A DNA stretch of 64,000 nt, from positions 9,672,001 through 9,736,000 of the forward strand of contig CM119376.1 of the NCBI GenBank assembly GCA_051294905.1, given 5' to 3'. A program made the position numbers and the translations under genes. Positions 7,301-46,300 of this stretch are shown here, in pieces. The notes beneath the pieces are model-generated. The model made no database searches. It was given only the letters and a program-made list of their open reading frames with translations, and was not told where the DNA came from. The DNA is from Botryllus schlosseri (lineage: Eukaryota). How positions within the stretch are numbered: position 1 is the stretch's first letter; every line of letters starts with the position of its first letter.

Positions 7301-10300
7301 AAAACTTGCCCTAATCAAGACGATAGAATATGCCAATGGCATTTTGTCCAGTATTTTTGCGCCACAAGTCATATAGCGATTGTCATCAGTTGTGTCTTGG
7401 ATTCTGTGAAAATTGATGCCGGCTGTAGCTACAGCTAATTACATGGCACCTTTCAAATCTCCAAGTATCTAAATATAGCGATTACTTTCAATTCTAATAG
7501 GCATTTTTTAGGGGGAAAAACTTACTTTTCATAATTTGAACATCTTGATTATTATAAATTCCATGCATGTGACGTCATATTTGGTGATATGATTGTTGAT
7601 ATATGGCGTTCTTTCCAATTCGCTACTTCTACTTCTAATTGAGTAGGAATTCACGACGTTTCTTCTGCTTCTAATTAAACAGAAACGTTGACTACTCCAC
7701 CACCTCCGACTCCTTCCTAGGTGGGCTAAAGCTATATCAATTTCAGGAAAAGAAATAATTTCGACTTAACTTACTCGCGCACTGCTGCTACCCGCTTCAC
7801 AATAAAATCCAGGCGGGCATATATTTCCAAGGGAGGGAAACGGCGAGCCAAACGTTATATTACAAACGCCGTCTTCAGTGACAGGCTGCGCATTCCACAC
7901 TCCCGACTCGCAATAATAACCAGGGTCGCAATCTCTCGTCACGCTTGTCTTTCCGACACCTTCACAAAATTTTCCACCATCGCAAGGAGTGCATTGTTCT
8001 ACCGATGACAACTCGGTGGCGGTAGAGTACGTGCCTTGGGGACACGGTTGTTGGTTAGGTCCTGTTGAAATGGATGACAATACTAAGTTAGTGCGCAAAA
8101 TGACAAAGTCGCAGCATCTAAATTCCAGATAGTGATAAAACGTTTGTGTCATTTCTGCGCAATATCAATGTTTAACATCAGGCAGGGTTCTGTATGTGGC
8201 TTGACAACATTGAGGGCCGCCCGGGTAGAAGACACTTATTGTCACCACTACGCTAACTCCCTCGCCAAATCGAGTGGAGCATTTGACTATCACTGATCTC
8301 ATCACCATAACAGTATGGATGATGTAGAAAGGTAAAATATGTACCTTATATGATACTGCAACAAAATTTAGCCAGTTCTGCACCACATTCAATATAATTT
8401 GGTATTTATTTGGACATGCCTATCTACGTCATTGCACTTTCTGGAAATTTTGCTTGTATATCACGTCTTTATAGGAAAGTCATTTCCACTAACGTGCATG
8501 GATTAATACCGCATGATTTGGGTGCTTTGATACCACTATTCCAGGTTTCAAGGCTCCCAGGATGGGGAAAAAGTATAAAAACTTTAATTCTCATTGATGA
8601 TAAAACAATAAAATTTTTGGTGGAAAGTGGGGCACTTGCTGAAAATCGTCACTTGCTACTTGACTCGAGTCATTACAATTAAGACTAGATTATGTTTCAG
8701 CTACCGTACTGGAATCGCTGTGACTGGCCATGTGGCCAAGCAATATCCGATACTGTGACAAAATGACTGGGAGTCGATGATTATCTTGGCACCACGTATG
8801 AAAGACGGTAGAAATAGAACAGTCAAGAAATTGCCCAAATCTCTACTCTTTTATATACAAATAGAAGGGAAATCATGCTTGATAGCGCCGTGTTGAAAGA
8901 CTTTGATAGAATAAGCGACTGATTAATCGAAAAGAGCGTCTTGTATTATCATCGTCACACACCAGTTCAAGGTAACAGAATACAAATTGAAGATTGGAAC
9001 CTAAATTCAGGGATGCATTTCTGCAAATCGAGACAACCTACAAAACCAGTAAATCACAACGAACGAATATTTTCCTGAAAATACATACCAGTCCCGTTAG
9101 GACAAAAATATCCGGCAGCGCACGGCGTTTTCACAGAGTCGGAATCGCCCGGGATAACATCGGACGACAAACAGTAAAATCCTTCCGGGCATAGTTCGCA
9201 AGATGCCATTTGCTGCGTCGGCGCGTAGAAGCCGTCTTTGCAAACTCTGGGATCGGTAGACTGACCAGGGCAGTAAGTGCCTATCGGACATGTTACCTCC
9301 GTGGCAGACGAGCTTCCCGACGGACAATAAAAACCTGTGTGCGGAAAATAGTGCTCAAAATCACACTCGATCGCCAAATTTTGCATTAGTCAATCTGTTC
9401 ACTTGAAAACAGTGAATAGTTGACTATTAATTACTAATTTTCCGGGCAGCAAACAGCACTTATTCAAAGGCATCTGCACTGTGAATATGATATTATCTGA
9501 TAATCTGATTGAGTTCTTGATCGCCTTAAGTGTAGAAGCAAAGTAATTGATACACAGTGTTGGCAATGTTTACATTTCTCATACCATGTCTGTTTGGAAC
9601 ACCAATTTATTTGAGAAGCAAATTTTGATGAAGATTTTCCTTATAAAAATGAAGAATTTGACATCTTCAAAGCAAGCGTTCTGGCTTTGTAAACGGGCAC
9701 AGTAGAAGGTATGGGTTAAAAAACAACGCTTCGGTAATACAGGTAGACAATCTACTTGATCATTAAAAAAATAATTACTATTGTTGTTGTGCAGGCTACC
9801 AATTAAAAATAGTACATTGATCTTAAGCGCTCTCTTCGCCTCGATATTGTGATACGATTGTTGATAAACAATGTTTTTTTCCAATTCTCTACTAGTTGCT
9901 AATGATTACCCCTGACGAGTGTCAGTCGAAAATATTCGGGTTCATTTCAATATGAATATATTAATCAATTGTGTATTGAATTTCCGTACCTCTAAGATGC
10001 TGCATTATTGCAATTACTTATGTCATGGTGTTGGTCTTGTTATTGAGACACTTGCCTGGCCACGAGATGATAAACTAGGTCACACACTACCTATCGTGGT
10101 TTACAAGGTTTTTTAGATCAGCCGACGAAGAGCATAATACTTCTGTGCCAACCAATCATCCAAGTGTAACTGTTTGATGCTGGTGTGATCAGACTAGTAG
10201 ACCCTCAAGGTCGTGCCAGTCATTCCTATCCAATACCGAATACTGTGCATGCATATTTTCTGTACCACCATTATTGCCGTCTGTTGTTATGTATTTTGAT

Positions 10301-13300
10301 CGGATGAAAATAAAGACTCTCTCTCTCTCTCTCAATGGAATTGTATAATCAGTACCTTCCAGACAAGCGCCGGTGACGTTAGTCAGACCTCTGTCTTCGC
10401 AGTAAAACCCTGCCGTGCAATTCAAGCATTGGCTCGCCAAGCTCAGGCCGGCGGCGTTGGAAAAAGTTGATACTGGACATGGCCGAGGAGTGCCAGTACC
10501 GCCGGGGCAGTACGATCCAGGGTCACATTCGATCTGCATTTAAAGCAAAGAGAAAAATTAAATATGCCATCGGCACGGTTGCATATATATATGTAAATTA
10601 GCATGAGATGAATTATAAAAATAGGAATCTCACCTAACTGAATAAAATTCCTATTTGCAGCAGGCATAATTTTCAAGATTGAGTTTTTTCCCAAAAATAC
10701 AAAACTTCACTTGCTATCATTAAACATAATTTTAAATAAAAATAAAACTCTGAAAGTGAAAGTCCGCATGGTGCTCATGTAATCACGTTTATAGTAATAA
10801 AATGTAGATTTGGTTTAGGTGTTACAAACTTCTAGTACTTATCAAATTTGACTACCGTTGACATTGAAAGAAGTTTCATTGTGGAAGACACAAAATTACT
10901 AATGACATCATAAATGGCTATCCAAAAATGACTTTCCACTTTAGTACTAGTATTTTCTCATAAAAATATAACAATAAAAAAAGATGGTGTCATATCGCCA
11001 GCAATGCATACCATTTTGAAACAATGTTATAGACACTATACCTCTTCCGCACTGGAAGACCCGACCGGGCAGTAGAATCCAGGACTGCAAGGCCCGACGT
11101 AGGACGTAAGATTGGTCGAATCGCAAAAGTATCCCGCCGTACACTGGGTGCATTCGGTTTCGTTCATCAAACCAAACGCGGAGCTAAATTTGAGTATTAA
11201 TATTAATTGCTAGCGTCGTACGGTATTTCATATTTTAGGAGTAGCTATTGCCTATAAATTACATGTGCTGTAAAAGTTTTTAAACAAAAATTACCATAGA
11301 GTTATGAAATTGTTGGAGTCAGACAAAGTTTTTGGATGGGCCTGAGTTATTTTATGAGTAAAGGCATTTGTACTTTTCGATGTCATAATAGGCAGTGCCA
11401 TCTGTTCTCATGCAAAAATGTTGTATTTTATGTGGTTCCGAACCATTGCCGCCAAATATGATGGTATATTTTATTATGAATACACTCGTGAATAATGCAT
11501 TCTAGTTTTTCATAGGCACCAAGTAAAATAATTCCCAACAAGGCTTCTAGGTACGGGGGTAAATTGCCAAAATTCATTCGCTTGCAACATTTTGAAAGAT
11601 CCTAATCAGGGCTTGTATGAACATTGAACATACCTGAATGTTCCTATCGGGCACCCCATCGGTTCAGCAGTGCCTTCCGGACAATAAAACCCTGGAGGGC
11701 ACTCGTTGGCTAGTTCTGCAGCAAGATTTGGAGTTGTCGAGTCTGAAGATGACCTTGAAAACAGCAGACAATCTCTTAATATCGATCTGCAACTGTTTAA
11801 AACCCACTAATATCTTACCTGCAATAATACCCTGCGCTGCACTTGGTGGTAGGGTAGTCCAAGCCTTCCGTGTCACAAGCAAAAGTGGCAAGACACTGTA
11901 AACAGTCGTCTTCCGATTGTAATCCAGTACCGTTAAAATATGTGCCTGAACGTGAAATTATGTGTGCATATTAGAAATAAGCCTTGCCACTGAATAAATA
12001 AAAATTACCTTTTGGACACCTAAACTCTTCCGCATATCTAGTTCCATTAGGACAGTAATGACCTTCTGGACACAAAACCGCACATGAACTGGTTACCGGG
12101 CCAAACGTGGCGTTACACACGCAACCAGCCGGGCATAATTTACACTCAGACTGGGCTTCTTCGTCCTGATAGTACCCGGAATCGCAAGGAGTAGGCAGGT
12201 CCGACCCCACTGGGCAGGCGTAGCCCGCCGGGCATGCATTTTCAGGCGGGTCCGCTTGTATATTACTGCCCGGGCAGTAATACCCAGCCGCGCAAAGCCC
12301 GGCCGTGTCCAACGCGGCAGTTGTGTTACAAAACATCCTAGCCGAACAGTTATTACATTCCGACTCGGAGCGCAGTCCAAGTGTATTGCTGTAAGTTCCG
12401 ATGGGGCATGGGGTTATTGAGTCAGTCCCTTTGGTGCAGAAATTTCCTTCAGGGCATGGGTAACCAGTCGGGTCACTACCGTCAGGCTGTGGTCGAGTGG
12501 CATTCATGACGCAATAATATCCAGCGGCGCATTCACCTTCTGGGGCAGGCAATTTGCTGTTTTGGCAATACCACCCGACTGGGCATGAATATGGTGAGCT
12601 AGCCCCGGACGGGCAGTAAAATCCAGGTTGACATTCGCCACCCATCGACGGGTTTGAAGGCATGGGCACATCACTGCCCGAAACACAGTAATACCCTTCC
12701 GAGCAGTTACCATCTGTGGACGACATTCCGCTTGTGGTACAGTATTCTCCCGGTAAGCATAGTTCGCAGAAATCTTCCGATTCAGATTGTATATTAGGGT
12801 TGAAATACCCAGGTCGACAAGGGTACTTTTCCCCGATTTCAGTCCCGGCGGGGCAGTAATGACCGCTCGGACACGGCTTGTCCGAATAAGTTTCGCTTTG
12901 AGGCGGACAATAAAATCCGGCCTTACAAACTTTACACTCGGACAGGCCCTGTTCGTCAGCATAAGTTCCATTTTCGCAAGGCACTGGTGATGTTGACCCC
13001 CCGCGACAGTAGAAGCCCCTCGGGCATATCCCGCCCCAGCCGGTGTTTTGATTTGCGGAACAAGTGCAGTTTTCTCCGGACGTGGTCCCGTTGGCGGGGG
13101 CCCTAATGTTGACCCCGACAGTGCAAAAGTAACCTGTTAATCGAAATTGGGAATTAATTGCCATACGGTTTTGTAGCACACGGATGTCATCTGAAAGGGA
13201 TTACTTCTACTCTTTTGTATTGGACGATGTGTTTTGCTTAACAATGTATTAGCCAGGAGCTTTTCTGACTTAACTAGACCTCATTTGTCTCAGTGTTTCA

Positions 13301-16300
13301 TATCAGATTTTACCAAAGCCAAATTCATTACTGTGGATTTGCAGCTGCGAATCAGATTTTTCAAGCATGAACTGTATAAAGAATAGATCACGCATCTGTT
13401 TGACTAACGAAAACCTTCACCACTGAGTTTGACTTGCTCTCACCACTATAGAACACAGATTTAAAGAACTAGCTTTAATTAAAGTTAGTGACACTATAAA
13501 ATGATACTAGGAAGTGAAAATAACGTGAATTCTTCCACTAGCTGTGACTGTGCTGTATTGCATCTGTCTGACTGTAAATTATTTCATGGGAGTTATAACG
13601 GAACGGAAAAAGTTTTCGGATATGCTTGCATCGGTTTTATGAATATTTGGTCATAACTACTCAGCAAAATAGCCCTAAATCCAACTTCACAAGATTGCAC
13701 CTAACTCTAATGTTGAGTTAGTGACGGAGATACATCTTGCGGAAGTAGCCACCTCTAATTAATCACTAACAGCACGTGACAATGATAAATTGAATACTGC
13801 TAGAAATGGACCTATCATACCTTCGTCGCAATCTCCGTTTGGAGCGGTCAGTATGGTACCATCGCAGTATTTACCAGCTTCGCACGGTAGGCATTCGAGT
13901 GCATCCGACAGTCCCGTCACGTTGCTGTATGTACCGGCGGGGCACGGTTTCCAGTCACGTCCTACCGATATGAAAAGAACAGTAGTAATCAATTAATCGC
14001 AATTGCCATTAAAAATTCCATACAATATAATGACGCATCTAACTACATCGCGATTAATTGCTTGATATTTGATATGCATGGAAATTCACGACTAAAAATG
14101 TATATCTCCGTCGTGTGCACAACTGCCATTTTCATTATTTGCAGGTTATGTTTTCTGTTTTATCCACAGATATATATGCATTTTGCTAATGAGCATTGGA
14201 ATTCAAATTCATCAAAGTTAATAACACAAAACCTATGTCACCAGACGGGATTCTTGCACTTGTCTATCCTTGGTTATCTGCAATGATCAATCACTACATT
14301 GTAATACAGAAAAATACTTTGATACCGTTTATTTATTATTTACGATTCTCCACTACTGTTTTACGCTGCCCATTGCTATGTTACGTTATATTTTTGTTGC
14401 GAGGATAGGTATGTAATGATGGTGATTCTAAACCCGACATTGTTGCATCAGAAATCGCAATTTGGTTTTGAATTGAATTTTATTTACTTTATTTATCACT
14501 GCATTTATTACTATTTACTTTATCGCACCTGTAACTCTTGATAAAAGGCAAGCAGTATTACTTTTAAAAGCTTTATTTACTGTTATCGTGCGTTCGCCCT
14601 TATCTGTTTAAATATTCTACGGTTGCGACATTCTGTCTTCATTGCGTAACCCTTTAATAACTCTCACACATTCCGCCTGACAGACAATTATTAGCAGAAA
14701 GCCGAAGTGTCACAAATCAGACGTTTGGAATCGACTACCCAAACTTCATAGGAAACTTAAGTGAATGACTATAACAGAGCTGTATGCAAAGTAAATCTAC
14801 CAAAAACGATCCTTGGTTTGTGGAATAAGCAGTGCACGAATAGATGGTAGCAAAATTCCTATCAAGGGATCGTCATAAAGTAAGGACCAGTAAAATGTAC
14901 CACTTCAAGCTTCAGGCTTCACATACCTTACCTGAAAGTGGCAACAAACCACCCAGTGTCGTACATATGTGACTGGGAGTATGACATGGAAGACTAGACA
15001 AATTTCCAAATCCAAATAGGATTTTCATAGAATTATAGCCACACTGTTTTTTCCAAATTATATTACTGATTTCGCAAAAAAATGGGAATTTAATGGAAGC
15101 AAAATTAGAATGAAATACGACCAAAGTCCAGTTAATATAAAATCAGAGTTTATTCAAATAAGCACAAGAATGGTAAATCTCTGTACCGAAAGCTTGCATC
15201 GTTCTACACTATACAGTTATCATTGGGCAGTTTCAGGGAAACCGCAAATTAGATTAAAATTGGATTAGTGGTATTTTTCTCCAACTAGTTCAAGTGTAAG
15301 TGAATATTTGCTGTTCCCAAAACAATGCAACATAAAATGCGAATTTTTCAGTTCACCAAGTGGAAACAAAAAATTCAACATCATAATGCAACTTAAACAC
15401 ATAAATAGATTCGCCATCTACCCACCTGTGCCGTTGGGGCAGTAATACCCTTCCGGGCAATCGAGTATGTTTGTGAAATCATCGGGAGGTGAAGGCATAC
15501 AATAAAAGCGCTCCGGACACAGTTCGCAAGACGACTGACCTAACAAACAAAAAGAGATGGTCACGATTTCACAGCGGGTCGTAAACGCAATCCACTGACC
15601 TTCCGTGTTGGTGTACGTTCCATCGGCGCATTCTCTGTATATTTCGCTACCGTTCGGGCAGCGAACACCGTACGGGCATACATTATCGTAACTGCTGCTC
15701 TGTCCTTCGAGGCAGTAATATCCTCCAAGACATGGCTCATCGACACTGGTTTGACCGAAATCAGGGCAGTAAAATCCGGCTAGTCATGAAAATATTGATT
15801 AAGTGGTGGAAATAAATTTCGCTATCAGAGTACTAAAAGGGCTTTGCCCATCTGCATTAGTTACTCAAGTGGTTATTAAATTGCACTTCTACCTACAAGT
15901 TTTGAGATTTTAGGTAAATCCCGATCATAAATACTCCTTTACTTGGGCCTAATTGGAAATCTACATGTAATTGAGTAGAAATTTACAATATTAGAAAGTA
16001 GAAAGTAGTTTTGGGATAAAAGTAGTTTAAAATACCTTTGTATTGCAATAACTCAGACAATAAACTCAGACTTGGGCATTGTGCGGCCCGTGACGTGATT
16101 CTGAGCAGGCTGTGATAAGTTCCACGGAAATTGTACCACAAAATCTATTTATTAATGTTAATGTGTGGACGAAAACTATAGTCTATATAAACTGAACCGA
16201 AAATGCCTTTACTTTGAATTCTAGTTCATTTATGCACCATGATTACGTAACCTACGTACGTCGTATGAGTAATCCAGATTCAAAATATAGTCTACCCGCC

Positions 16301-28300: not shown

Positions 28301-31300
28301 TGGTGTTGGGTGTCGCAGTGGTACTGCCTTCCGGACAATAAAATCCGCCCGCACACTGTCCGGCTGGCTCTTCCAGCCCTGGGGCATCACAATACATCCC
28401 GGCCGTACACGGCAAGCATTCCGTATCGCTCTTCAAGTTTGTCGCATTGGAATAACTTCCCACCGGACAATCCTTTCTTTCCGTGGTTCCTGCTGCACAG
28501 TATTTACCGGCGCCGCACTCCTCTTGCTGGCGACTGGTGGAATTGGCAGGGCAGAAATACCCAGCATCACAAGAGCCTGATGTTCCGGTCATGTTATATT
28601 CCGCGCAGTATTGACCTGGAAATGATACGAAAACTTTAGTAAAAGCACAATAACGGACGGACGTTGTCAGTAACGAACAACTTTTAGACTTTCAAAGAGC
28701 TTCTTGGAGGTACAGAACTTCGATATACAGTTGAGTAGTATATTCATATTGAAATGATCAAAAATATTTCCGGCTGACACTCTTCAGGAGTGTTCGTCAG
28801 CAATAAATGCATTGAGCTTATTTTAGACATGAACGCGACTCACCAATGTCACATTCCTGGCATTCATCCCGGGAGCCAAGTTTCCCGTTTGATCCATATG
28901 ACCCCGGTGGGCATGGGTAAGGACTTATTGTGCCCTCGGGACAGTAAAATCCCAAAGGACATTCTCCTGTTGTAGAGGTTTCAGACGGCGTTGCCGATGT
29001 TGCTTCGCTGTTGCAGAAATACCTGAACGAGACATACTCCCAAATTGTATTTTTTATGGATCCATTCTCTGAAGCTCGAATGTTATATTCGAGTAGTACA
29101 ACTGTGGCCTATTTTGTCTCAATATTACGTTCTTGCGGCCTCTACGAAATTTGAAAAGTGGCCTGCGACTCGTTTTAAGTTGGCGACCCATTATCTATAG
29201 ACTTTGAATCAACTGGAATCTTTTCTAGATAAGGAGTGGAATTTGAGCATGATACAAATGACATCATGATTTGAATTTGTTATTATTATTATTGAAACCG
29301 CTCATTACTGATTAGTAGGGCGATTTTTTTTGACCTAAAAAACGGAAGATTTATGACCTAAAAAATCTAAATTTTGACTTTTTTTGACCTAAAAAAACTG
29401 AGATTTGACCAAATTTTGACCTTACATATGCAAATTAGGTGTTTTCGCACATAATGTCAAAATTGTACTACTTATCTTCATTTCTGGTTGGAACTGTCTG
29501 TACTTACAAAGTAGATTGGCCTGAAAAAACGTTTTGGGCATAAAAACTAGCAAATTTTACATGAAAAAACTATTGAATAGTATATTCATATTGAAATGAA
29601 CCGGAATATTTTCGGCTGACACTCGTCAGGGGTAATCGTCAGCAACTAGTAGAGAATTAGAAAGAACATGGTATATCAACAATCGTATCACAAAATATGA
29701 CGTCATTTGTGTGACTTGGAGTCGACTTTTATCAAAATACACCAACCAAAACTCTGTCAACAAAAGGAGTTCGTGTACCACCTAAAAATAGTACATTGAA
29801 CGCTCTCTCTTTCGTGCTGGTGACGTCATATTTTGTGATACGATTGTTGATATACCATGTTCTTTCCAATTCTCTACTAGTTGCTGACGATTACCCCTGA
29901 CGAGTGCCAGTCGAAAATATTCGGGTTCATTTCAATATGAATTACTATTCAATTGTATATTGAAGCTCTGTACCTCCAAGAAGCCCATGAAAAAACTAGT
30001 ATTTTAACGAAATCTGGCCCTATGAAGAATTCCAGTAATTGCATTACGTATTATGGTGGAAATAATTAAAATTTGTTGTAGTACAACGAACGAAAGATAG
30101 CTTACTTTCCTACATTCTCGGGTAGAAAGTGTTTGTCCTTACTAAGTAGCTCGCCAAGAATGGGGAAAGAACGTTAAACAGCAGCAGCTGTTGGCTGACA
30201 ACACTGAAGTTGTGTGCACACTGCTGGGGACATACCGTGTTGCTTCATTCAGACAATGTTGTCTATATCACAATTTTTCAGCTTGCGCTTCTTGATTTAA
30301 GAATCATGCAATGTCCAAGCAGTCTTGCTTCAGTTAGGATATTGCGGTACGTTGATCATAAAACCATGTCACTATTTGTTTCATTTGATCGTTTATGATT
30401 CACACTGAGCAGACGATGGGTCGTTTACAACGGTAGGCCTATAAAGTAGGCTACAAGCTGTAAAATATCAAGTGATAAGTTCACCGACAGCGCAAAATCT
30501 ACGATATAAACGAAATTCAGAGGTCAAAAAATGTTTGACTTTGTAAACAATTTTGACAAATTTTGACCTAACGCTAAAATTTTGACCTAATTTTGACTTT
30601 TTTTGACACGTCCAAAAAAAATCGCCCTACTGATTAGCATAAGAATGCAAGTATAATCCACCAGCTTGTATGTACTTCAAAGCCAGTCAATTATCATCAT
30701 ATAAATGACATTTCATACCCTTGCGAGCACAAATTGATCGGTTCCTCCATTCCGTATTCATTGCAATAATAACCACCGAAACAGGAATTACATTCGTCTT
30801 CAGATTTTGCTCCAGTTTTGTTGTTATATCTCCCAGGGGGACAGGGATTCTCGTATCGAAAAGCAGTGCCGGGCGGACAGTAATACCCTGAAAGTCAGAA
30901 ATTGCCAATCAATCGCCATATCTCCATTAGCAAAAAGAGTATGTACCTTTCACACACTCTGTGTTGTTGAACGTTATGACGGGTCCAGGTGTGGCATCGC
31001 AGTAATATCCCTCTGGGCAAATCTCGCATTCTCCCTGCTGTGATAAGGCTTGATACGTTCCATTTCCGCAAGGCAGCTCTTGCGATGATCCGGACGGGCA
31101 AAAATAACCTTACGTAGAGAAAATTCGGCATATCACATATATACTGGAAAAGCACAAATGAACAATTTATCTAGACAAATACGATAACTGAGTGTTCCCA
31201 ATCTCATTTTCTGCCTCAAATGCAAAACCAAACGCCTAATCCGGAAAATATTGCACACATGAACATGAATTAATAAAGTAATGCTGAAATGAGTTCTTCC

Positions 31301-34300: not shown

Positions 34301-37300
34301 TACAAGACTGATACGCAAGGTTTGCCGAGTCCGCGGTAGCAGATTTTAGTGCAGACAGGATTTGACGCCTGCTAAATCGGCACTCATTGACAACGAAGTG
34401 TCGCGTCGAAACAGTAGTAAAGAGCAATACACATAAATTCACAATCCTTTAGCTAAATAACAAATACTGCTCTGAAAATAGTATGAGGATTCGCTAGGAT
34501 TTATACCAAGTCACATCCAACTCATTAGAAGATTAACAAGATTTTACCGGGCCGACAAGCAGTACAGTCACTCAAGCTTTTTGCTTCTGTGATACCGCTG
34601 TATGTTCCTGCCGGGCAGCGAAATTGATTTCTCGACTCTGTCCCATTAGGACAATAATTTCCGGCTGGACACGGCTCGCCAGCAGTTGCATTTGCAACAC
34701 AGTAAAATCCCTGGAAGAACAAGGTGTGTAAATACATTTTAGACACAAGCATCGACAACCAGGGCTGGGCAGAATCGAGTGCCTGAGTGATTAGATTTCC
34801 AATCAAGTATCTGGCTTCTAGTCAAGTCGAGAATTGAGTATTAGTTATAAACATGGCATAAAGTACCAATAAGACGGAATGAAATTTATGTCTTTTATGC
34901 AACTATAAAGAAATAATGCCAGTTATCCACCTCAAAAAATTATAACTTGGGGAATTTGGACCATTCCTATTTTTTGCGATTTGTAACGGTATTGATCACT
35001 ACTTCACAGAAATTCATATCCGCTAACAATCAACGGTTTCAAGCCGGTTTGTAATGACTCGAGTAATAACCGGCCAAGACAGACATTTCATTTTAACTTT
35101 GATTAAAGTAAAGTCACGAAGCTATTACAATTTCGTCTATCAGTCCTGATACTAGGAGAATAGGGACAGAAACTGTCACTACTGGGGAAAATTGCTATAT
35201 TATGAATGCGAGCCATTCTATATCACTCGATCATAGTTGAAAAAAGTGGGTTGATCCACACTCGACTCAAAACACTATGACTCGGACTCGACCTTCAAAC
35301 TAGCTGACTTGGAATCGGACTTAAGTCGGTGGAGAATTGAAAACGACTCAAGTTAAAACTATAAATTGAGATTGACTTGTGACTCGGAACCTTGTAACCT
35401 GGTTACAGTTCAGGTTTCAATTGAGGTTTACAGCACAGTTGGGAAAAAATATCAAAACTATAATTTTCTTTGATAATAAAATTCTTATCGAAAGGGAAAT
35501 ATATTTCCAAAAATTATCTCTCGCTTTTCGACTTGAATCATGATGCTCAATACTCAGACTCAATTACTTAAATCATTGTGCCCAGGCCTATGGATAATAT
35601 TACCTCCGGGCATATTTTGCAAGCGGAAAGTCCCAATACGTCAGCATAGGTCCCGGATTCGCACGCAATCGGAACCTCTGCTCCTGCCGGACAAAAATGC
35701 CCAAATGGGCATATATCACCCCATCCTGTGCTGGCGTTGGGGGCGGATACTTGGGAACCGCCGGTGCAATAATAACCCGGGTCGCATTCGCCGGTCTCCG
35801 TTGTTCTTCCCAGCTCATCGCAAAAATATCTGTGTGCAGAGAAAGATTTTTGGTGTGTAAAAATAAAATGTAAATCGAGCTGTTTGTATCTTTATAAAAG
35901 CACTGGGACTAAAAATGATGTCTACTCGCCTTTTGAGTCCCTGTAAATATGACGATGATTTGATATACTATTTCAGTTAGAGTTGTATTTGAGATGTTAC
36001 AAAACCGTATTCGCCCTTTGATTTTAAAGTAGGATTCTGTTTCATCCGGCATGCAGTTTTACATATGGAAGAACATCATTGGATCATTGGATTTTTAGAC
36101 GTCAAAATTGTGTATCAAAAATAGTTTGGTCATATCAGAGGTGGAACGTAGCAAATTTCTTTTACATTATAGAATACTCAAACGCTGCTTCTCTGCTTAC
36201 ACCACAGACCCAATTTTTTCTCCAATTTTTACTTGAATCAGTCGATGTCTGTATTAGAAATTACTACCTCGACTTATGTTTGAGATTTACAATATCAGCT
36301 GTGCTGCCGTTTGAGTAGAATTACTGACTACTTTTACCAACTGCATGTCATCTCCAAAGCTTTTGTGGGTCCATATGAAGATCAAAGCCGCATATTAGCT
36401 ATTTCAGGTAAAATTAGTCTCCACACATACCCAGGAGTACACGTGTTGCATTGATCTTGAGATTTGAGCTGTCCCTCGTCAGAAAATGTTCCTCTGGGGC
36501 ACCTTACTGGAGCCGGCGATCCCTCGATACAATACGATCCAGCCGGACATGGTCCACAGTCATAGACGGTGTCGAACGAGTCAACGACGGCGCATGAGAA
36601 CGGATTGATCGAACCGGCTGTACCGTTAGAGTAAAATCCTGCAGCGATCCGACCTAAATTGGCAGCAGAATGGTTGAACTAGGAACAGATTTCTGCGAGA
36701 CACGAGTGTGTGAATTTATTTACAAGAAAATGAAGTGTTTTAATTTGGTTCTCTCACGGATATCTCCAGCAATTTGACAAAGTACAATGATTTTAACCTT
36801 TTTTCAAAGCCCTTTCTCTTGTGTACCGCAATACGACTGTGATACACTTGGAAGGGGGCCTAAACATTCAGACAACGTTGTAAGTGTAACAAGTGTCATA
36901 GCGGAGAGGTATTGTATAAGTGTCGGTTTACCTGCGATGTGCTACATGTTTAACGTGATATCAGTATCTTATTATCTAACTGTGATCGGTATTACAGAAT
37001 AATCATGAAGCAATTCATTGTAATGATGATAGAAAGAATTCATGAGATATGTATGTTTTATTTGCTTCGACTTGATATATTGATCAGTGTAATGGGAATT
37101 AAATACTTCCCTATTACTCAAATTTCAAGAGATTCTTGGCGGTATGGAACTTCAATATAAAATTCAATAGTATATTCATATTGAAATGAACCCGGGTATT
37201 TTCGGCTAAAAAATGAAAATATCACCGGCATGAAACTTCGAAAAATCAGGTTCATTTCAATATGAATATACTATTGAATTGTACACTCAAATTTCCTTCA

Positions 37301-40300: not shown

Positions 40301-43300
40301 AAATATTCTTCTTGCAATATCGAATGCAGTCACATCCGATTATTTGCTAAAACTATGAAGCAAAGGAACTGGTTGAAACTATACATATTTGAGAATTCTT
40401 CAGATCATATCATTCGACACCACTACTTAAAGTAATTTTAACATATCTTGAAAATCATTTCTTCTACTTGTAATTTAGTAGAAACTCACTGCATTGGTTC
40501 TACATCTAATTCAATAGCAGTGCTTACTACTGTGATCCTAATCTATCGGTATATAAGTTATGCAGCAAGATAACTTACCTCAGTCAATCCAGTCTCGTTG
40601 GCGTAGAGTCCGGTTAAACAAGGGGTGGGCGCGGCACAGCCGTCTGGCTCGCAACTGCAGTAACTGTTAATTGGGCATATGCTTCCCCCGTCGGTGACTA
40701 GATCCTGTGAATGAATTGACTGGTAAATAGTAGCCAAAAGGATGCCATTAATTGATAAATGTCCTGAGCTTATGCATGCATTTCTACTACTTGAAAATAT
40801 CGCAAGACAGCAGAGCAATGGGAATTCGTAAAAAGTCTATGGTAGGTTGGTAACCGGCCTGGATTGAAAACAGTTACAAAATATATTGATGTTCATGGAG
40901 TTTCGTTACACAATCACGGCATGATAACTGACAGGGTTATAAGCACCACATTTCCTCTTTACAGAGTCAGTCAGAAGAGAAGTATTGCATAACTCCTGGG
41001 GTTAGAATACTTTTGATGTGCTATCGGTCTATATTAAACATGGGTAAATTGTAAGTAAATAACTTGGAATTAGCCAAGGGTACCAGGCAAATTCTGCGCT
41101 AAACCGTGCTATCAATGATGCCAATTATCTCCCGATAAAAATACTTCACTTTCATCTTCAGATCATCAAATTGGAGATAAATTACCCATGTATAGTTCTT
41201 CCAAACTGCTTCCCATTTTCTATTTGCTGTGTTTCACATAGGAAACTATCCAACATCCTAGTTCGCAACCCAAAGAGAAGTAAAATATGCTACTTTACCC
41301 TAAACATTGTTGATTCATTAAGATTACTTGTATCGAGCAATATAGGGTAGTTAATATAAATTCCAAGCCCAACAATATAATCGAGAGCTATGTCTGCTGC
41401 AAAATATCCCACAATACTAAATTTGCGAAAATAATTACCAGAGGCCGTGGTGAAGAGGCTCCTCCCACGCAGTAGAATGCTGGATCGCAAACGCCGGTGA
41501 AGGTGGTAAGGCCAGTACTGTTGCAGTACTTTCCGGCGGAACAAGGCCTGCATTGCAAGTAGCACAAGGTAATGGAAGTCGATTCATCGATTGGATATGC
41601 TAGCACCGGGAGGCTTCTTGAGTGATGCAGATTTAAAACTCCCATTTAATTGTAGTGCCATTAGCAATTTTGCCATGGTCATGCCAGGAATTTTTGAAAT
41701 TTTGAGATAGATATTCATCGCATATTATTTTAAAACATAGTCAGAGATAGCTTGTACGTACAAGTTAATTAATTCAAGCAACTAATGAAAGAGTACTGAA
41801 GACTATTATTAAAACCATAATTTCTAAGTTCTTTTTGAAGTACTCAAGTACTGTCAAGAAATTCACTGTTTTTTTTATTAAAAGTCGCGGCATACATACT
41901 CGCATTCATCCTCGCTGCCTGCTCCAACATTTGGATAGAATGTCCCGACAGGACAGGGCAGCATAGCGGTAGCACGTTCAGGACAGTACATGCCGGCATA
42001 GCATCTTTCGCCTTCGGACGTACTCACAGCTATACGGGATATGTAATTGTTTATGCTCTGTTGAGTAAAAACCCCTCCTTTTTACCATACCTTCATCGCC
42101 TTGTTGTGATGGTTCGCTCAATCTTGATCCGTTATAGCATATATAACCGGCCGAGCAATTGCCAGTGGGTTCCGTTGCGCCCAATTGATTGCAATACTGG
42201 CCGCGTGGACATGGTTCGCAACCGTTGATGTCTTTTTGGTTTGTGCTGTAAAATAGAATGGCAAAGTTGAACAAATTACACTGCTACGTGTACTTTATGC
42301 GGCCCATTAAATCAGAATATTGATCAAATCAAAATCTGAATTTTGTTGCTGAAATCAACTCGATCCACTAAATTACTCCGGGAAAAATTGTGATTTTCTA
42401 TCTTATCTGATTTGCAAAAATTTCAGTCACGTTAGCATCCAAAATCCTGTCCTACCGCAAGAAGACGTTTATCTATTTCTTTTTCACACCAACACACATT
42501 TGCAAGAACAGAGAATGATTTGTTAAATGATGAGGCGAAAGAGTATACAAAAAAACACAAAAGTACTACAGGCAGCATGATAAGAAGACTTATTCCTTAA
42601 TTAAAAGTAGAACTGACCAATGTATTAGGTTTAGCCAAAAGGCTACAAAACCTGGAAGTCCTGTCATGTGTGTACGAAATCTTCTTGAAATCAACAGATA
42701 CTATCCAAGACATACAGAATTTAATGCAGACGTTATTGCATGATAGGTTTCGAAATGTATCTCCGTGTATCATGTGTATAAGACACTTTTATATTTGAGG
42801 TAAATTATAACGTTTTTTTGGTGACTCGACTTGACTCGAGTCATTTTCTGTGTATTGACTCTACTAGTATTCAAGTCATTGAGCATGACTCGTACTATGT
42901 CATATGACTCGAGACTCGCACGGCTAATACCGACACATCAATGTAGTTTCAAAGAATAATAAAGTTACCACACTATTAGTATTTCCACTAGTAGTACTCG
43001 TACTTGAAGACACGACCAGAAACTGTTAAAGGTGTGGAAAATTAGTATATTATGAATAGCTTCTTGGAGGGACTTCAAAAATGACTTTTTTTCTCAAATC
43101 GTACTGGCTACTTGATAAAATTGTTAGGTTACCTAATTTAAGCCTACACACAAAATTTGGTTTAATTCCAGCCAGTAACCGCTTTGCTACAGGAGAAGAA
43201 AGTTTATATTTATTATATAAAATTAAATAATAAAAAATTTGAAAATTTTCTGTTCACTCCATGAAAGTGTTAGGCTGTCTATAGAAACGATGCTCACCAA

Positions 43301-46300
43301 ATTTCGTTCAATTCCAACCAGTGGAAGCGGAGTTATTGCTGTCGAAAAATTGGGATTTGAATAAAATAGTATTTACGGTGACCGATTCTTTGTTTATTTA
43401 TTATAATTGTGCTCACCGTGAATACTATTTTATTCAAATCCAAATTTTTCGACGGCAATAACTCCGCTTCCACTGGTTGGAATTGAACCAAATTTGGTGA
43501 GCATCGTTTCTATAGACAGCCTAACACTTTCATGGAGTGAACAGAAAATTTTCAAATTTTTTATTATTTATTTTCATATATTAAATAGAAACTTACTTCT
43601 CCTGTAGCAAAGTGGTTGCTTGCTGGAATTGAACCAAATTTTGTGTGTAGGCTTAAATTAGGTAACCTAACAATTTTATCAGGTAGCCAGTACGATTTGA
43701 GAAAAAAAGTCATTTTTGAAGAGCCCTACTGTATATTCAAATAGAAATGAACCCGAATATTTTCGGCTGACAGTAGTTGCTCACGATTACCCCTGACGAG
43801 TGTCAGCTGAAAATATTCGGGTTCATTTCCATATGAATATACTGTTCAATTATATTATGAATGGAAAGCGTTCGATATCACCAAGCAGAGTTGTAAAAAG
43901 TGGGTTTAAGAATGCTTCAACTCGAATCTGGACAGCTAACACAATGACTTGGTCTCGGACTCAAATCATAAGACTATGACTCGGACTCGACCTTCTGCTC
44001 GCAGCTAAAATGATCAGAGTGAAAATTTTTTAACAAAAAATTCTACTCGCCCACATCACAACGGGCAAGGCATATTTATGGTAATTTGATTGTACTTTGC
44101 ATCAACAATGAATATTGGCTTGATATAAATGGAAAAATTGAAAGATGACTCACGCAGGATTATAAGTTCCAAGGGGGCAAAGATCGCCTCGTTCGTTGTA
44201 CGTTCCGATGTAGGCAACCACTGTTTTGTTGTACGAGAATGTAGCGTTCAGATATGGAGATGGACAGTAGCTTCCTACAAGTAAGGTTAGTTCATTAACG
44301 ACTATGCAGATGCACCGTGTGTTGTCTATCAGCTATAAACAGTCGCAGCAGCCAGCAGTGGTTACTAATACTGTAGTTCAACTTTTTTCAAATAATCGGG
44401 AATGAGTTTTATAATTGCCCAACTTACTGTCGGCTTTAATTTTACACGACTTAAATTTCCGCGTTATAGGTTTTGAGTAAAATCATTGAAATCAAGCAGC
44501 AATAGAAAATTACTATGTAGCATAGCATGTAGTAAACAGTACTTCCTTTACTTCCTCTCCACAGCTACCTATTTCACCTGAATACATATTAATTAATTGA
44601 AATGAACTGGCCAGCGTCTTTCAGATTACCTGATCAAATCGAATGAACGAAACTTACCCGCGGGACATGGTATGCCAGTCGCCATTCCCGTATAAGGACA
44701 GGTGAACCCTGGCTCACAAGGCAAGCACGTTTCCGAAGTCCCTTCCGGCTGGTAGGTACCCAGCGGGCATTCCGTCTGTTCAAACGACCCCACTGGGCAG
44801 TAAGTGCCTAGAAAAGATTTCCAAATAAAATCTTATTCGCTGGAATGGAAAGACTTTCCAATACCGTTTGCGCATGGGTTCTGGAACGGCGTGCTAGACC
44901 CTGTCGTACAAAAGTACCCAGCGGCACAAGGCCCATCCGGTTCCGGGCTGGATGCCGCGGAACAGTAAAACCCTGCATCGCACTGCTTGCAATCTCTAGC
45001 GTTAGTTTGTCCCGCGGAGTTGCTGTAAGTCCCAGGCGGACAAGCCGTTTGATTACACCTTCCTTGCTCGCAATAACCTCCTCTCGGGCACAATTCCCCG
45101 GTAGTCCCGTCGATGGGGTCTGACTGATTCGAACCCGAGTAACACAAGTACCCTGCGTCACATTGCCCTCGGGGCACCACCATTCCTTCGCTGTCGCAGT
45201 AATACCCGCAGTCGCACAAAGTGCAGTTGTCTGGCGATGTGAGACCAGCGGAGTTTCCGTACGTGCCTTTTCGGCAAGGTTCCGGTACTTCGCGGCCCTC
45301 GACGCAGTAATACCCTTGAGTGCATTCCAACGGATTCACCGACCCTGATGGGCAATACCAGCCCGCAGGGCATATTGCACAGTCTTCTACTACTTCAGCG
45401 TTAGGTGTGTCTCGATATGTTCCGCCTGGACACGCGATCTGAAATATATACGATAAACATAGTAAGCTAGGGGTTATTGAAATTCAACTTCAACCCTAGG
45501 GGCCACCGCCCACTGGTTGGGAACCCGTGCTATAAACTAAATTTTCTTCAAGCACTGCATCTTACACAGAGCAGCAATGATTTTCTGTCATCTCTTATCA
45601 ACATTAAAATATTGTGTTATTGAGTCTAATACGTATAACCAGTTTTAGTCGTTCACAACAATAGTAGAATACCGTATTGTGTTTTTTAAAGAGTCAAACC
45701 CATTTTTGACTTCATTTCCGCTGATATGAGTCGACAATTGCACATGGTGTATCTTAAGTAGGCCTATGGTGGTCACATATTATGTTGTTATATGATTTCT
45801 CCATTGCTGGTTAGTTTGAAAAACCAAATGGTGTGATGTACAAAATTACCTGACGGGGTCCATAAGATCCAATCAAGGGCAGTTCGGCCATCGTATCAGG
45901 AAACACGTTCGGTATCTCAGTAGGGCAGAAATAGCCAGGATCGCAATTGCCCGATGTGCTCCAAGATCTTTCCAAACAAAAATATCTGCAGAAAAATCAC
46001 ACAATGACGCACAGATCCGTGACATTCAAACCATAATATTACCCGGCAGTGCAAGGCAAGCAATCTGTAATATTGCCTTTGGTAGTATCAGGGTTGTAGG
46101 TTCCAGTGGGGCAGGGTACCTCAACGGGCGTTTCCTCGGGACAGTAATGTGCTTTCGTGCAGTCCTCCTTATTGGATTCCGATTGTAAGCCAGCGCGGCA
46201 GTAATAACCGGCGGGGCATTTTTTGTTGTTGATCATGTCATCGTAAGAGGTGGTGTTGTTGTCACAATAATATCTGTGAGACATAAAGGAATGAGCAGAG

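What the first reader, a model, noticed from the sequence alone, without database searches (positions are those of the whole stretch)
9901..43822. Dispersed intronic hairpin family carries a minimal, dimer-type hammerhead ribozyme core
Seen in sequence: family A copies contain ACCC-CTGACGA-G(7 nt)C-GAAA-ATAT-TC-GGGT at 9908-9941 and 29893-29926, with a G-U variant at 43789-43822. This gives the hammerhead CUGANGA and GAAA boxes, an UUC cleavage triplet, a 4-bp stem I (extended by AATGA/TCATT past a 2-nt bulge in the 9.9-kb copy), a one-pair stem II and a two-pair stem III inside the palindrome AATATT. Established: Penelope-like retroelements carry minimal type-I hammerheads with short, palindromic stem III that cleave as dimers. 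Inference: this is an unannotated ribozyme-bearing non-autonomous family that repeat pipelines would call a MITE.
Basis: partly seen in the sequence, partly recalled or inferred. Interest (0 to 1): 0.85.

Follow-up and report, generated by a model that had tools for sequence, protein, structure and literature searches.

The report
Penelope retroelement hammerhead with pseudoknot helix
The repeated "hairpin" motif is the hammerhead ribozyme motif at the end of an abundant Penelope-like retrotransposon, a known association, but here the ribozyme's second helix is built by pairing with an upstream box instead of a hairpin.

Summary
The sequence observation is correct. The motif stands at 9908-9941, 29893-29926 and 43789-43822, and a fourth copy lies on the minus strand at 29600-29633.

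The hammerhead reading holds, but the MITE reading does not. "Family A" is the last ~150-300 nt of an autonomous 2.7-kb Penelope-like element (PLE) encoding a reverse transcriptase and a GIY-YIG nuclease. Its copies are 5'-truncated and often inserted head-to-head, which creates the hairpins. The motif lies between the stop codon and the next unit's ATG, where PLE hammerheads are known to sit.

Eleven PLE lineages at 40-89% protein identity all keep it. The core is invariant apart from a C3-G8 to U3-A8 swap, stem I covaries, and helix III is always a palindrome, which implies a dimer.

Loop II pairs with a box 8 nt upstream of the core (6 bp, with compensatory changes), forming a pseudoknotted helix II.

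No Rfam hammerhead model detects the motif. RNA-seq shows no ends at the predicted cut, so cleavage is untested. All four window copies are slightly damaged relics. The 29.6/29.9-kb pair rides inside a hAT-like DNA transposon. Other agents of this scan reached the same pseudoknot reading elsewhere in this genome.

The parts
9797..10000 (+). Solo, old, 5'-truncated 3' end of the Penelope-like element (about 82% identical to the young family)
   Evidence: blastn against the family
9899..9941 (+). Hammerhead relic. Upstream box P 9899-9903 (mutated to CTAAT), stem I 9908-9911/9938-9941, core CTGACGA 9912-9918, G10.1 9919, loop II box P' 9921-9925, C11.1 9927, GAAA 9928-9931, palindrome AATATT 9931-9936, C17 9937
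   Evidence: covariance-model hit of 68.0 bits
29316..29330 (+). Left terminal inverted repeat (TAGGGCGATTTTTTT) of a 1.31-kb hAT-like non-autonomous DNA transposon spanning 29316-30629. Its 8-bp target duplication CTGATTAG lies at 29308-29315 and 30630-30637. It carries the head-to-head PLE pair as a passenger.
   Evidence: Termini and 8-bp duplications compared in 12 copies; window sequence; relatives lacking the PLE insert
29564..29705 (-). Inverted, 5'-truncated PLE 3' end (left arm of the 'hairpin'). Its hammerhead relic is at 29600-29642, where the first stem I pair is broken (CGGT instead of GGGT).
   Evidence: covariance-model hit of 61.3 bits
29704..29992 (+). 5'-truncated PLE 3' end with 3' tail (right arm). 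It begins inside the ORF's last codons.
29884..29926 (+). Hammerhead relic. P box 29884-29888, stem I 29893-29896/29923-29926, core 29897-29903, G10.1 29904, P' 29906-29910 (mutated to GCCAG), C11.1 29912, GAAA 29913-29916, palindrome 29916-29921, C17 29922
   Evidence: covariance-model hit of 68.3 bits
43731..43855 (.). Short head-to-head pair: minus-strand copy 43731-43772, cut inside the hammerhead, and plus-strand copy 43774-43855
43780..43822 (+). Hammerhead relic with the P box mutated (CTCAC) and C11.1 changed to T
   Evidence: covariance-model hit of 49.3 bits
28748..28817 (-). Decayed hammerhead of a related older PLE copy (GAAA changed to GGAA)
   Evidence: covariance-model hit of 37.9 bits; sequence
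37154..37283 (.). Tiny head-to-head pair of extreme 5'-truncated PLE ends (37154-37207 minus, 37238-37283 plus), cut within or after the hammerhead
1757..1823 (-). Hammerhead relic of a third PLE lineage, closest to the L052 type, with GAAA changed to GAAG
   Evidence: covariance-model hit of 31.6 bits; sequence compared with L052

Best explanation
The motif is the hammerhead-type RNA carried by an abundant, young, autonomous Penelope-like retrotransposon (PLE). [quoted passage not shown]

The RNA occupies the roughly 140-nt spacer between the stop codon of one unit and the ATG of the next, which is the pLTR. PLE integration produces 5'-truncated copies, and often a second truncated copy in inverted orientation. 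The genome is therefore littered with solo 3' ends and head-to-head 'hairpins', each holding the motif about 35-70 nt from its outer end.

The RNA is laid out as follows:
- box P, 5-6 nt;
- 8 (7-9) nt made up of a linker plus the 5' strand of stem I;
- the core [C/U]UGAN[G/A]A;
- G10.1;
- 1 nt;
- box P', 5-6 nt;
- C11.1;
- GAA;
- a 6-8-nt palindrome starting with A15.1 and ending with U16.1;
- H17, the cleavage site;
- the 3' strand of stem I.

Shown by comparison: P pairs with P', and that helix abuts the G10.1-C11.1 pair. Inferred: together they act as a 7-bp helix II built as a pseudoknot. Also inferred: the 1-nt linker crosses its deep groove, and the distal end of this helix is tied to the distal end of stem I.

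Helix III cannot close within one molecule, because the palindrome's central bases are adjacent. The covarying palindrome therefore implies that two copies pair to form a 6-8-bp helix III, the known dimer mode of PLE and newt hammerheads.

Inferred function: cleavage after H17 would cut tandem or read-through transcripts 2-95 nt upstream of the ORF's ATG. That would define the 5' end of the element's RNA.

The four window copies each carry at least one defect relative to the family majority. They are relics, not working ribozymes.
For: The family is a PLE:
- Two tandem units lie 2,675 bp apart in L043.
- The ORF matches Pfam RVT_1 at E 3.5e-9.
- Its C-terminus reads VVYEYRCHCDCGYVGRTSRRLQDRINQH, with a sub-threshold GIY-YIG match at E 0.024.
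- Copies are variably 5'-truncated, with head-to-head junctions in L004, L008, L009 and L020.
- The 3' ends of the copies fall into two classes about 35-40 nt apart. This matches the published PLE 'tail' (PMC8557442, PMC11167929).

The motif is conserved:
- All 11 related lineages examined keep it just 5' of the ATG. These are famA, an 89% relative, a 70% family, and eight metagenome or Logan contigs at 40-63% protein identity.
- The invariant columns of the alignment include hammerhead core positions U4, G5, A6, A9, A13, A14, A15.1 and U16.1, plus the first base of box P.
- C3-G8 becomes U3-A8 in five of the 14 aligned sequences. This covariation was reported for Cercyon PLE hammerheads (PMC4209133).

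The structure covaries:
- 92.2% of cells pair, against 69.7% in shuffles (0 of 500 shuffles reach it).
- The covariation score is 0.693 against 0.242 (0 of 500). Controls with partners slid by 1-3 columns pair at only 25-48%.
- 11 of 14 pairs change on both sides, including 4 of the 5 pseudoknot pairs.
- RNAalifold predicts the P/P' helix on its own, plus a sixth pair.
- The P/P' variants seen are CUGAC/GUCAG, CUAGC/GCUAG, CUAAC/GUUAG, CCAGU/GCUGG, CAAGG/CCUUG, CGUGC/GCACG, CUCAG/CUGAG and CCCAU/AUGGG.

[quoted passage not shown] 4).

Abundance: the 141-nt arm gives 1,265 first-look candidates in the genome. All 150 scored hits of the covariance model reach at least 62 bits.
Against: - Self-cleavage was not shown.
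- In bulk RNA-seq raw reads no place shows a pile-up of molecule ends. Depth is continuous across the predicted site, L043 6925|6924.
- That coverage comes almost entirely from read-through of truncated copies on both strands. 98% of reads run into unlike flanks and the ORF is nearly silent, so the test is weak.
- No Rfam 15 hammerhead model matches the window copies even at E <= 10, or seven of the relatives' loci at E <= 1.
- Single-sequence folding is not better than shuffles (z -0.3 to -2.1) and offers competing hairpins.
- Within the young family the motif is not clearly more conserved than its 5' flank: 1.3% against 1.6% per site.
- Published PLE hammerheads cleave poorly in vitro and were dispensable for insertion in vitro (PMC4209133, PMC11167929).
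- The three-dimensional feasibility of the pseudoknotted helix II is inferred, not modelled.
Confidence: 0.85

Rival explanations
1. The motif is a conserved structured RNA (or DNA) signal of the PLE terminus with a different job. Candidates are recognition by the element's RT/EN for target-primed reverse transcription, a promoter or 5'-UTR element, or a translation signal. On this reading it keeps a hammerhead-like core but does not cleave in vivo.
For: - No read ends appear at the predicted site.
- Published PLE hammerheads are very slow, and catalytic mutants did not affect insertion in vitro. The same study found no RNA-seq ends at its hammerhead site (PMC11167929).
- The motif sits next to the sites where reverse transcription should start, 35-70 nt downstream.
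- It also sits next to a conserved ACGTCA box upstream.
Against: - The conserved positions include eight hammerhead core bases.
- The C3-G8 to U3-A8 double change preserves a tertiary pair that matters only for the hammerhead active site.
- A pure protein-binding site would not need stem I, the pseudoknot and a palindrome all to covary.
Confidence: 0.12
2. The motif is a chance hammerhead look-alike in the inverted repeat of a MITE. This is the null reading I held at first.
For: - The hairpin part of stem II is a single pair.
- Helix III is two A-U pairs.
- No Rfam hammerhead model matches.
- The arms are 97% complementary, like a foldback element.
Against: - The arms are 5'-truncated ends of an RT-encoding element, with variable junctions.
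- The motif persists with compensatory changes down to 40% protein identity.
Confidence: 0.02
3. The family is a non-autonomous 'retrozyme': short tandem units bounded by hammerheads that spread through circular RNAs.
For: - Animal retrozymes carry type-I hammerheads and are linked to PLEs (PMC7229834; bioRxiv 10.64898/2026.07.22.740005).
- A few reads show a joint that goes back on the element (19 reads in a single-cell run).
Against: - The copies are dispersed singles or inverted pairs, not tandem short units.
- Every arm continues upstream into the PLE ORF when it is long enough.
- The only direct tandems seen are full 2.7-kb units.
Confidence: 0.03

Closest known systems
Minimal type-I hammerheads of Penelope-like elements (Cervera & De la Pena 2014, PMC4209133; Lunse, Weinberg & Breaker 2017, which I could not read here)
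   Same: - Located in the pLTR of an EN+ PLE.
- Type-I order of the core strands.
- Short stem I of 4-7 bp.
- Conserved G10.1-C11.1 pair.
- U3-A8 variant of the core.
- Minimal palindromic helix III, implying action as a dimer.
   Different: - The published min-hammerheads have a long hairpin helix II (6-8 bp) with an unpaired base between A9 and G10.1.
- They are described as lacking tertiary contacts (PMC7761336).
- Here only 9 (8-10) nt separate A9 from G12, and the 10.x strand of helix II is supplied by a box upstream of stem I, forming a pseudoknot.
[quoted passage not shown] 2011, PMC3088659, Fig. 4), and pseudoknotted hammerheads in general (about 40% of those surveyed)
   Same: - Stem II is reduced to one pair.
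- A 5-6-bp Watson-Crick pseudoknot ties the stem I side to the stem II side.
- In the published case the pseudoknot was experimentally required for fast cleavage.
   Different: - The published case is a type II bacterial or metagenomic ribozyme. Its pseudoknot joins loop I to the 3' tail, and it has a normal stem III.
- Here the ribozyme is type I, the pseudoknot joins loop II to the 5' tail, and helix III exists only as a dimer.
Type-SGC and other non-circularly permuted hammerheads (Eckert et al. 2023, PMC10085705)
   Same: One strand of stem II is joined directly to one strand of stem I by a short linker of about 3 nt. This departs from the three classical topologies.
   Different: There the three conserved core segments are reordered. 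Here their order stays type I, and only the distal 5' strand of helix II is relocated.
Poseidon PLE of Anolis carolinensis, PAc (Frangieh et al. 2024, PMC11167929)
   Same: - Tandem units.
- A hammerhead at the junction next to the ORF start.
- Two adjacent 3'-end classes that define a 30-40-nt 'tail'.
- No RNA-seq ends at the hammerhead site.
   Different: - In PAc the ORF starts inside the hammerhead and the cut lies 26 nt after the ATG.
- Here the cut lies 2-95 nt before the ATG.
- PAc has a conventional stem II and loop II.
hAT-superfamily non-autonomous DNA transposons (for the carrier at 29316-30629 only)
   Same: Short terminal inverted repeats (TAGGGCG...) and 8-bp target site duplications in 12 of 12 copies examined.
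   Different: No transposase was looked for. The superfamily assignment rests on duplication length and terminus shape alone.

Membership tests
Hammerhead ribozyme | Conserved core: C3 U4 G5 A6 N7 G8 A9, G12 A13 A14, A15.1-U16.1, and H17 not G | tested here: met
   Invariant or near-invariant in 14 sequences of 11 lineages. H17 is C, U or A.
Hammerhead ribozyme | C3-G8 tertiary pair kept when it varies | tested here: met
   CG in 8 sequences, UA in 5, UG in 1, none unpaired.
Hammerhead ribozyme | Stem I supported by covariation | tested here: met
   ACCC/GGGU, UCCC/GGGA, CAUCA/UGAUG, CGUA-type and others. 3 of 4 aligned pairs change on both sides.
Hammerhead ribozyme | Helix II as a hairpin between A9 and G12 | tested here: not met
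   Only G10.1-C11.1 can form (A-U in one copy). The seven intervening bases do not pair with each other. A 6-bp pseudoknot with an upstream box takes its place.
Hammerhead ribozyme | Helix III | tested here: inconclusive
   It is never closable within one molecule. It is always a 6-8-nt palindrome with compensatory changes (GC 7, UA 4, CG 2 at the centre). That fits only a two-copy duplex.
Hammerhead ribozyme | Site-specific self-cleavage after position 17 | tested here: inconclusive
   No pile-up of read ends in RNA-seq raw reads.
Hammerhead ribozyme | Match to a curated Rfam hammerhead covariance model | tested here: not met
   No hit at the gathering score, at E <= 10 on 91- and 451-nt stretches, or at E <= 1 on seven of the relatives' loci.
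Penelope-like element (EN+) | Single ORF with a reverse transcriptase followed by a GIY-YIG endonuclease | tested here: met
   RVT_1 at E 3.5e-9. The C-terminal GIY-YIG signature is read directly and matches PF01541 below threshold, at E 0.024. Two homologues (P0012, P0083) carry PF01541 in precomputed annotation.
Penelope-like element (EN+) | Partial tandems (pLTR), strong 5' truncation, an adjacent inverted 5'-truncated copy, and an optional 30-40-bp tail | tested here: met
   Tandem units at 2,675-bp spacing. Variable 5' ends and head-to-head junctions. Two 3'-end classes about 35-40 nt apart.
PLE min-hammerhead as described in 2014 | Long hairpin helix II (6-8 bp) with an unpaired base between A9 and G10.1 | tested here: not met
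   G10.1 follows A9 directly, and there is no hairpin.
PLE min-hammerhead as described in 2014 | Conserved G10.1-C11.1, palindromic 15.2-16.2 / loop 3, and short stem I | tested here: met
   The arms are ends of an RT-encoding element with variable inner junctions. Only the enclosing 1.31-kb carrier at 29316-30629 has TIRs and 8-bp duplications.
Non-LTR retrozyme | Short tandem units, each with a hammerhead | tested here: not met
   Motif copies in the window lie at 9.9, 29.6/29.9 and 43.8 kb. Genome hits are dispersed.

The most novel reading that the evidence does not exclude
This PLE clade is widespread in marine metagenome contigs and very abundant in this genome. It may carry a distinct, so far undescribed topological class of hammerhead. 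In this class the distal 5' strand of helix II is relocated upstream of stem I, giving a pseudoknotted helix II, and this is combined with an obligate-dimer helix III. If the pseudoknot supplies the tertiary brace that published PLE min-hammerheads lack, these ribozymes could be the first efficiently cleaving animal PLE hammerheads. They would cut just upstream of the ORF to make the element's 5' end.
Probability: 0.4. Interest if true: 0.65.

Novelty: new variant of a known kind. Interest (0 to 1): 0.5.

Why it matters
PLE hammerheads are among the most numerous ribozyme motifs in animal genomes, yet their activity and role are unresolved. Published examples cleave poorly and are said to lack tertiary contacts.

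This clade keeps a covarying pseudoknot in place of helix II, and it escapes every Rfam hammerhead model. That would explain why descriptor searches report some PLEs as holding only a hammerhead core or no canonical hammerhead. It would also add a new family model for annotation, and it offers a clean test: disrupt and then restore P/P' to see whether tertiary bracing makes PLE hammerheads fast.

On the practical side, the result corrects the annotation. These "hairpins" are truncated, inverted PLE insertions, not MITEs. One of them spread secondarily inside a hAT-like DNA transposon.

Tried and rejected
- **Initial reading, rejected.** I first took the motif for a chance look-alike in a MITE inverted repeat. 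I dropped this after walking upstream to the RT/GIY-YIG ORF and comparing relatives.
- **Rfam.** Searches at gathering and at permissive E-values found no hammerhead hits. This counts against membership by model, not against the structure.
The motif differs from the majority at 1.3% of sites, against 1.6% in the 40-nt 5' flank. The larger difference from all flanks (3.9%) is driven by the ragged 3' end. The family is too young (about 94-98% identical copies) for this test to decide anything.
- **Single-sequence folding.** Not significant, with competing hairpins, and pseudoknots cannot be predicted this way.
- **RNA-seq.** No ends at the cut site. The coverage is read-through of embedded copies on both strands, so this neither supports nor excludes cleavage.
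- **Metagenome pattern scan.** A scan for the core with 7-nt spacing and AAGCTT returned mostly one further PLE family (UCCC/GGGA stem I, CUGAC/GUCAG, U17) plus unrelated chance hits. It added one lineage but little diversity.
- **Literature gap.** Lunse et al. 2017 could not be read. I therefore cannot exclude that this variant is among their ~150,000 sequences (number from memory).
- **Limits I kept.** I built no full-length consensus of the element. A majority string of the 166-nt non-coding spacer was computed only to count per-site differences.
- **Not tested.** The host-gene or intron context, and the strand-bias claim of a sister note.

Full report
**Observation.** The 43.8-kb copy has T at C11.1. 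A mismatch-tolerant search finds a fourth copy on the minus strand at 29600-29629, where shuffles expect none.

**What the repeat is.**
- The 29.6/29.9-kb pair forms 122-nt arms that are 97% complementary.
- The 141-nt arm gives 1,265 first-look candidates in the 495-Mb genome, and the scored copies are 86-100% identical, nearly all 96% or more.
- Comparing 30 loci shows that the arms are not the termini of a foldback element. They continue upstream into shared sequence for variable distances.
- Pairs meet head-to-head at different junctions: L020 at 2449/2450, L004 at 2742, L008 near 1440, L009 near 1422.
- Walking upstream reached two direct tandem units 2,675 bp apart in L043, one with an 856-codon open frame.
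- That frame has Pfam RVT_1 at E 3.5e-9. Its C-terminus reads VVYEYRCHCDCGYVGRTSRRLQDRINQH, a GIY-YIG signature with a sub-threshold PF01541 match at E 0.024.
- At least 17,843 first-look candidates for this protein exist in the genome, including intact copies at 97-100%, 88-89% and 68-70% identity.
- The 3' ends of the copies fall into two classes about 35-40 nt apart.

All of this is the published signature of EN+ Penelope-like elements: partial tandems (pLTR), heavy 5' truncation, an adjacent inverted truncated copy, and a 30-40-bp tail (PMC8557442, PMC11167929). "Family A" is therefore the 3' end of an autonomous PLE, not a MITE.

**Where the motif sits.** It lies in the roughly 140-nt spacer between the stop codon and the next unit's ATG. 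The predicted cut, UC|GGGUUC, is 14 nt before the ATG. This is the pLTR, where PLE hammerheads are known to lie (PMC4209133, PMC6765202).

**Comparative test.** I fetched the same spacer from:
- a 70% family and an 89% family of this genome;
- eight metagenome or Logan contigs whose ORFs are 40-63% identical.

All 11 lineages have the motif just 5' of the ATG, and again after the stop codon where the contig reaches that far. The invariant alignment columns include core positions U4, G5, A6, A9, A13, A14, A15.1 and U16.1, plus the first base of box P.

What changes does so in a compensatory way:
- C3-G8 becomes U3-A8 in five of the 14 aligned sequences.
- Stem I changes from ACCC/GGGU to UCCC/GGGA, CAUCA/UGAUG, CGCUA/UAGCG, UACUU/AAGUA and UUACAG/CUGUAA.
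- The helix III segment is always a palindrome: AAUAUU, AAGCUU, AACGUU, AAAAUUUU, AAAGCUUU or AGGCCU.

The central two palindrome bases are adjacent, so they can pair only with a second copy. This supports the dimer mode.

**The missed feature.** The seven bases between G10.1 and C11.1 do not form a hairpin. Five or six of them (P') are complementary to a box (P) that ends 8 (7-9) nt before C3, and the two change together through eight different sequence pairs.

On the MAFFT alignment:
- The full model, with the pseudoknot, pairs in 92.2% of cells against 69.7% in shuffles (0 of 500).
- It scores 0.693 for covariation against 0.242 (0 of 500).
- With partners slid by 1-3 columns, pairing falls to 25-48%.
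- 11 of 14 pairs change on both sides.
- RNAalifold, which knows nothing of my model, predicts the P/P' helix and adds a sixth pair directly next to C11.1.

I infer that P/P' stacks on G10.1-C11.1 to make a 7-bp helix II as a pseudoknot. The single base after G10.1 would cross the deep groove, and the 3' end of P would be tied to the top of stem I. Linker length plus stem I length is almost constant at 8 nt. A natural hammerhead with a one-pair stem II and an essential 6-bp pseudoknot has been shown to be fast (PMC3088659). Published PLE min-hammerheads, in contrast, have a long hairpin helix II and are described as lacking tertiary contacts (PMC4209133, PMC7761336).

**Detection by models.** No Rfam 15 hammerhead model matches the window copies or seven of the relatives' loci. 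A covariance model built from my alignment finds six sites in the window. These are the four copies plus two decayed ones at 28748-28817 and 1757-1823, the latter from a third PLE lineage. In the genome, all 150 scored hits reach at least 62 bits.

**State of the window copies.** Each has at least one defect relative to the family majority:
- the P box is mutated at 9899-9903 and at 43780-43784;
- P' is mutated at 29906-29910;
- the first stem I pair is broken in the minus-strand copy;
- C11.1 is T at 43.8 kb.

In a sample of 50 family copies, 34 have every element intact and 49 keep the core boxes.

**The carrier.** The 29.6/29.9-kb pair did not insert here as a PLE.
- It lies inside a 1.31-kb repeat at 29316-30629.
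- That repeat has terminal inverted repeats (TAGGGCGATTTTTTT) and 8-bp target duplications, here CTGATTAG, which differ in each of 12 copies.
- Diverged relatives of this repeat lack the PLE insert.

A hAT-like non-autonomous DNA transposon therefore captured a PLE insertion and then amplified.

**Expression.**
- Bulk RNA-seq raw reads cover only the last ~200 nt of the element, equally on both strands, at 150-340x. The ORF is at 0-3x.
- 98% of the laid reads run on into unrelated flanks.
- No place shows a pile-up of molecule ends.

So the signal is read-through of embedded relics. It gives no evidence for or against cleavage of genuine element transcripts. The same negative result was reported for the Anolis PLE (PMC11167929).

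**Verdict.** The hammerhead reading is right and well supported by comparison. The family assignment is wrong. The interesting part is the pseudoknotted helix II, which I did not find described for PLE hammerheads in the papers I could read (Lunse et al. 2017 was not available). Notes from this scan on other pieces of the same genome, seen after I had reached this reading, report the same pseudoknot. Catalysis is untested.

Noticed in passing
window 29316-30629 (duplications at 29308-29315 and 30630-30637): A 1.31-kb hAT-like non-autonomous DNA transposon (TIR TAGGGCGATTTTTTT, 8-bp target duplications). It captured a head-to-head PLE insertion and then amplified. At least 17 of the 30 loci fetched hold this composite at 94-96% identity.
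   Followed up: partly
window 29821-29828; also L046 about 145-152, and L052 and L054 upstream of their hammerheads: A TGACGTCA (CRE-like palindrome) or ACGTCA box is conserved about 60-80 nt upstream of the hammerhead, in otherwise unalignable pLTR sequence of several lineages. It is a candidate for the pLTR's internal promoter.
   Followed up: no
G000:C9:108047-109175: A tandem array of about eight 151-bp units derived from an internal part of the PLE ORF (query positions 49-188 of L015:707-1100), next to a PLE copy. It looks like a satellite born from the element.
   Followed up: no
window 1757-1823 (minus strand): A hammerhead relic of a third PLE lineage in an AT-rich stretch. It is nearest to the L052-type motif (CUAAC/GUUAG class) and its GAAA is mutated to GAAG.
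   Followed up: partly
L043:6840-7043: RNA-seq depth over the PLE terminus is equal on both strands. Several positions differ from this copy in most reads (e.g. 6893 G>A, 6918 C>T, 7003 G>A), which reflects the family majority rather than editing. Head-to-head pairs in transcripts should form long double-stranded RNA hairpins.
   Followed up: no
L058-L137: One metagenome PLE family has both CUGAAGA and UUGAAGA cores (C3 or U3 with G8) among near-identical copies. U3-G8 may therefore be a tolerated intermediate between C3-G8 and U3-A8.
   Followed up: no
L053: The metagenome contig L053 also holds the motif on both strands, as a head-to-head pair. The inverted insertion mode is therefore shared by distant members of the clade.
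   Followed up: no
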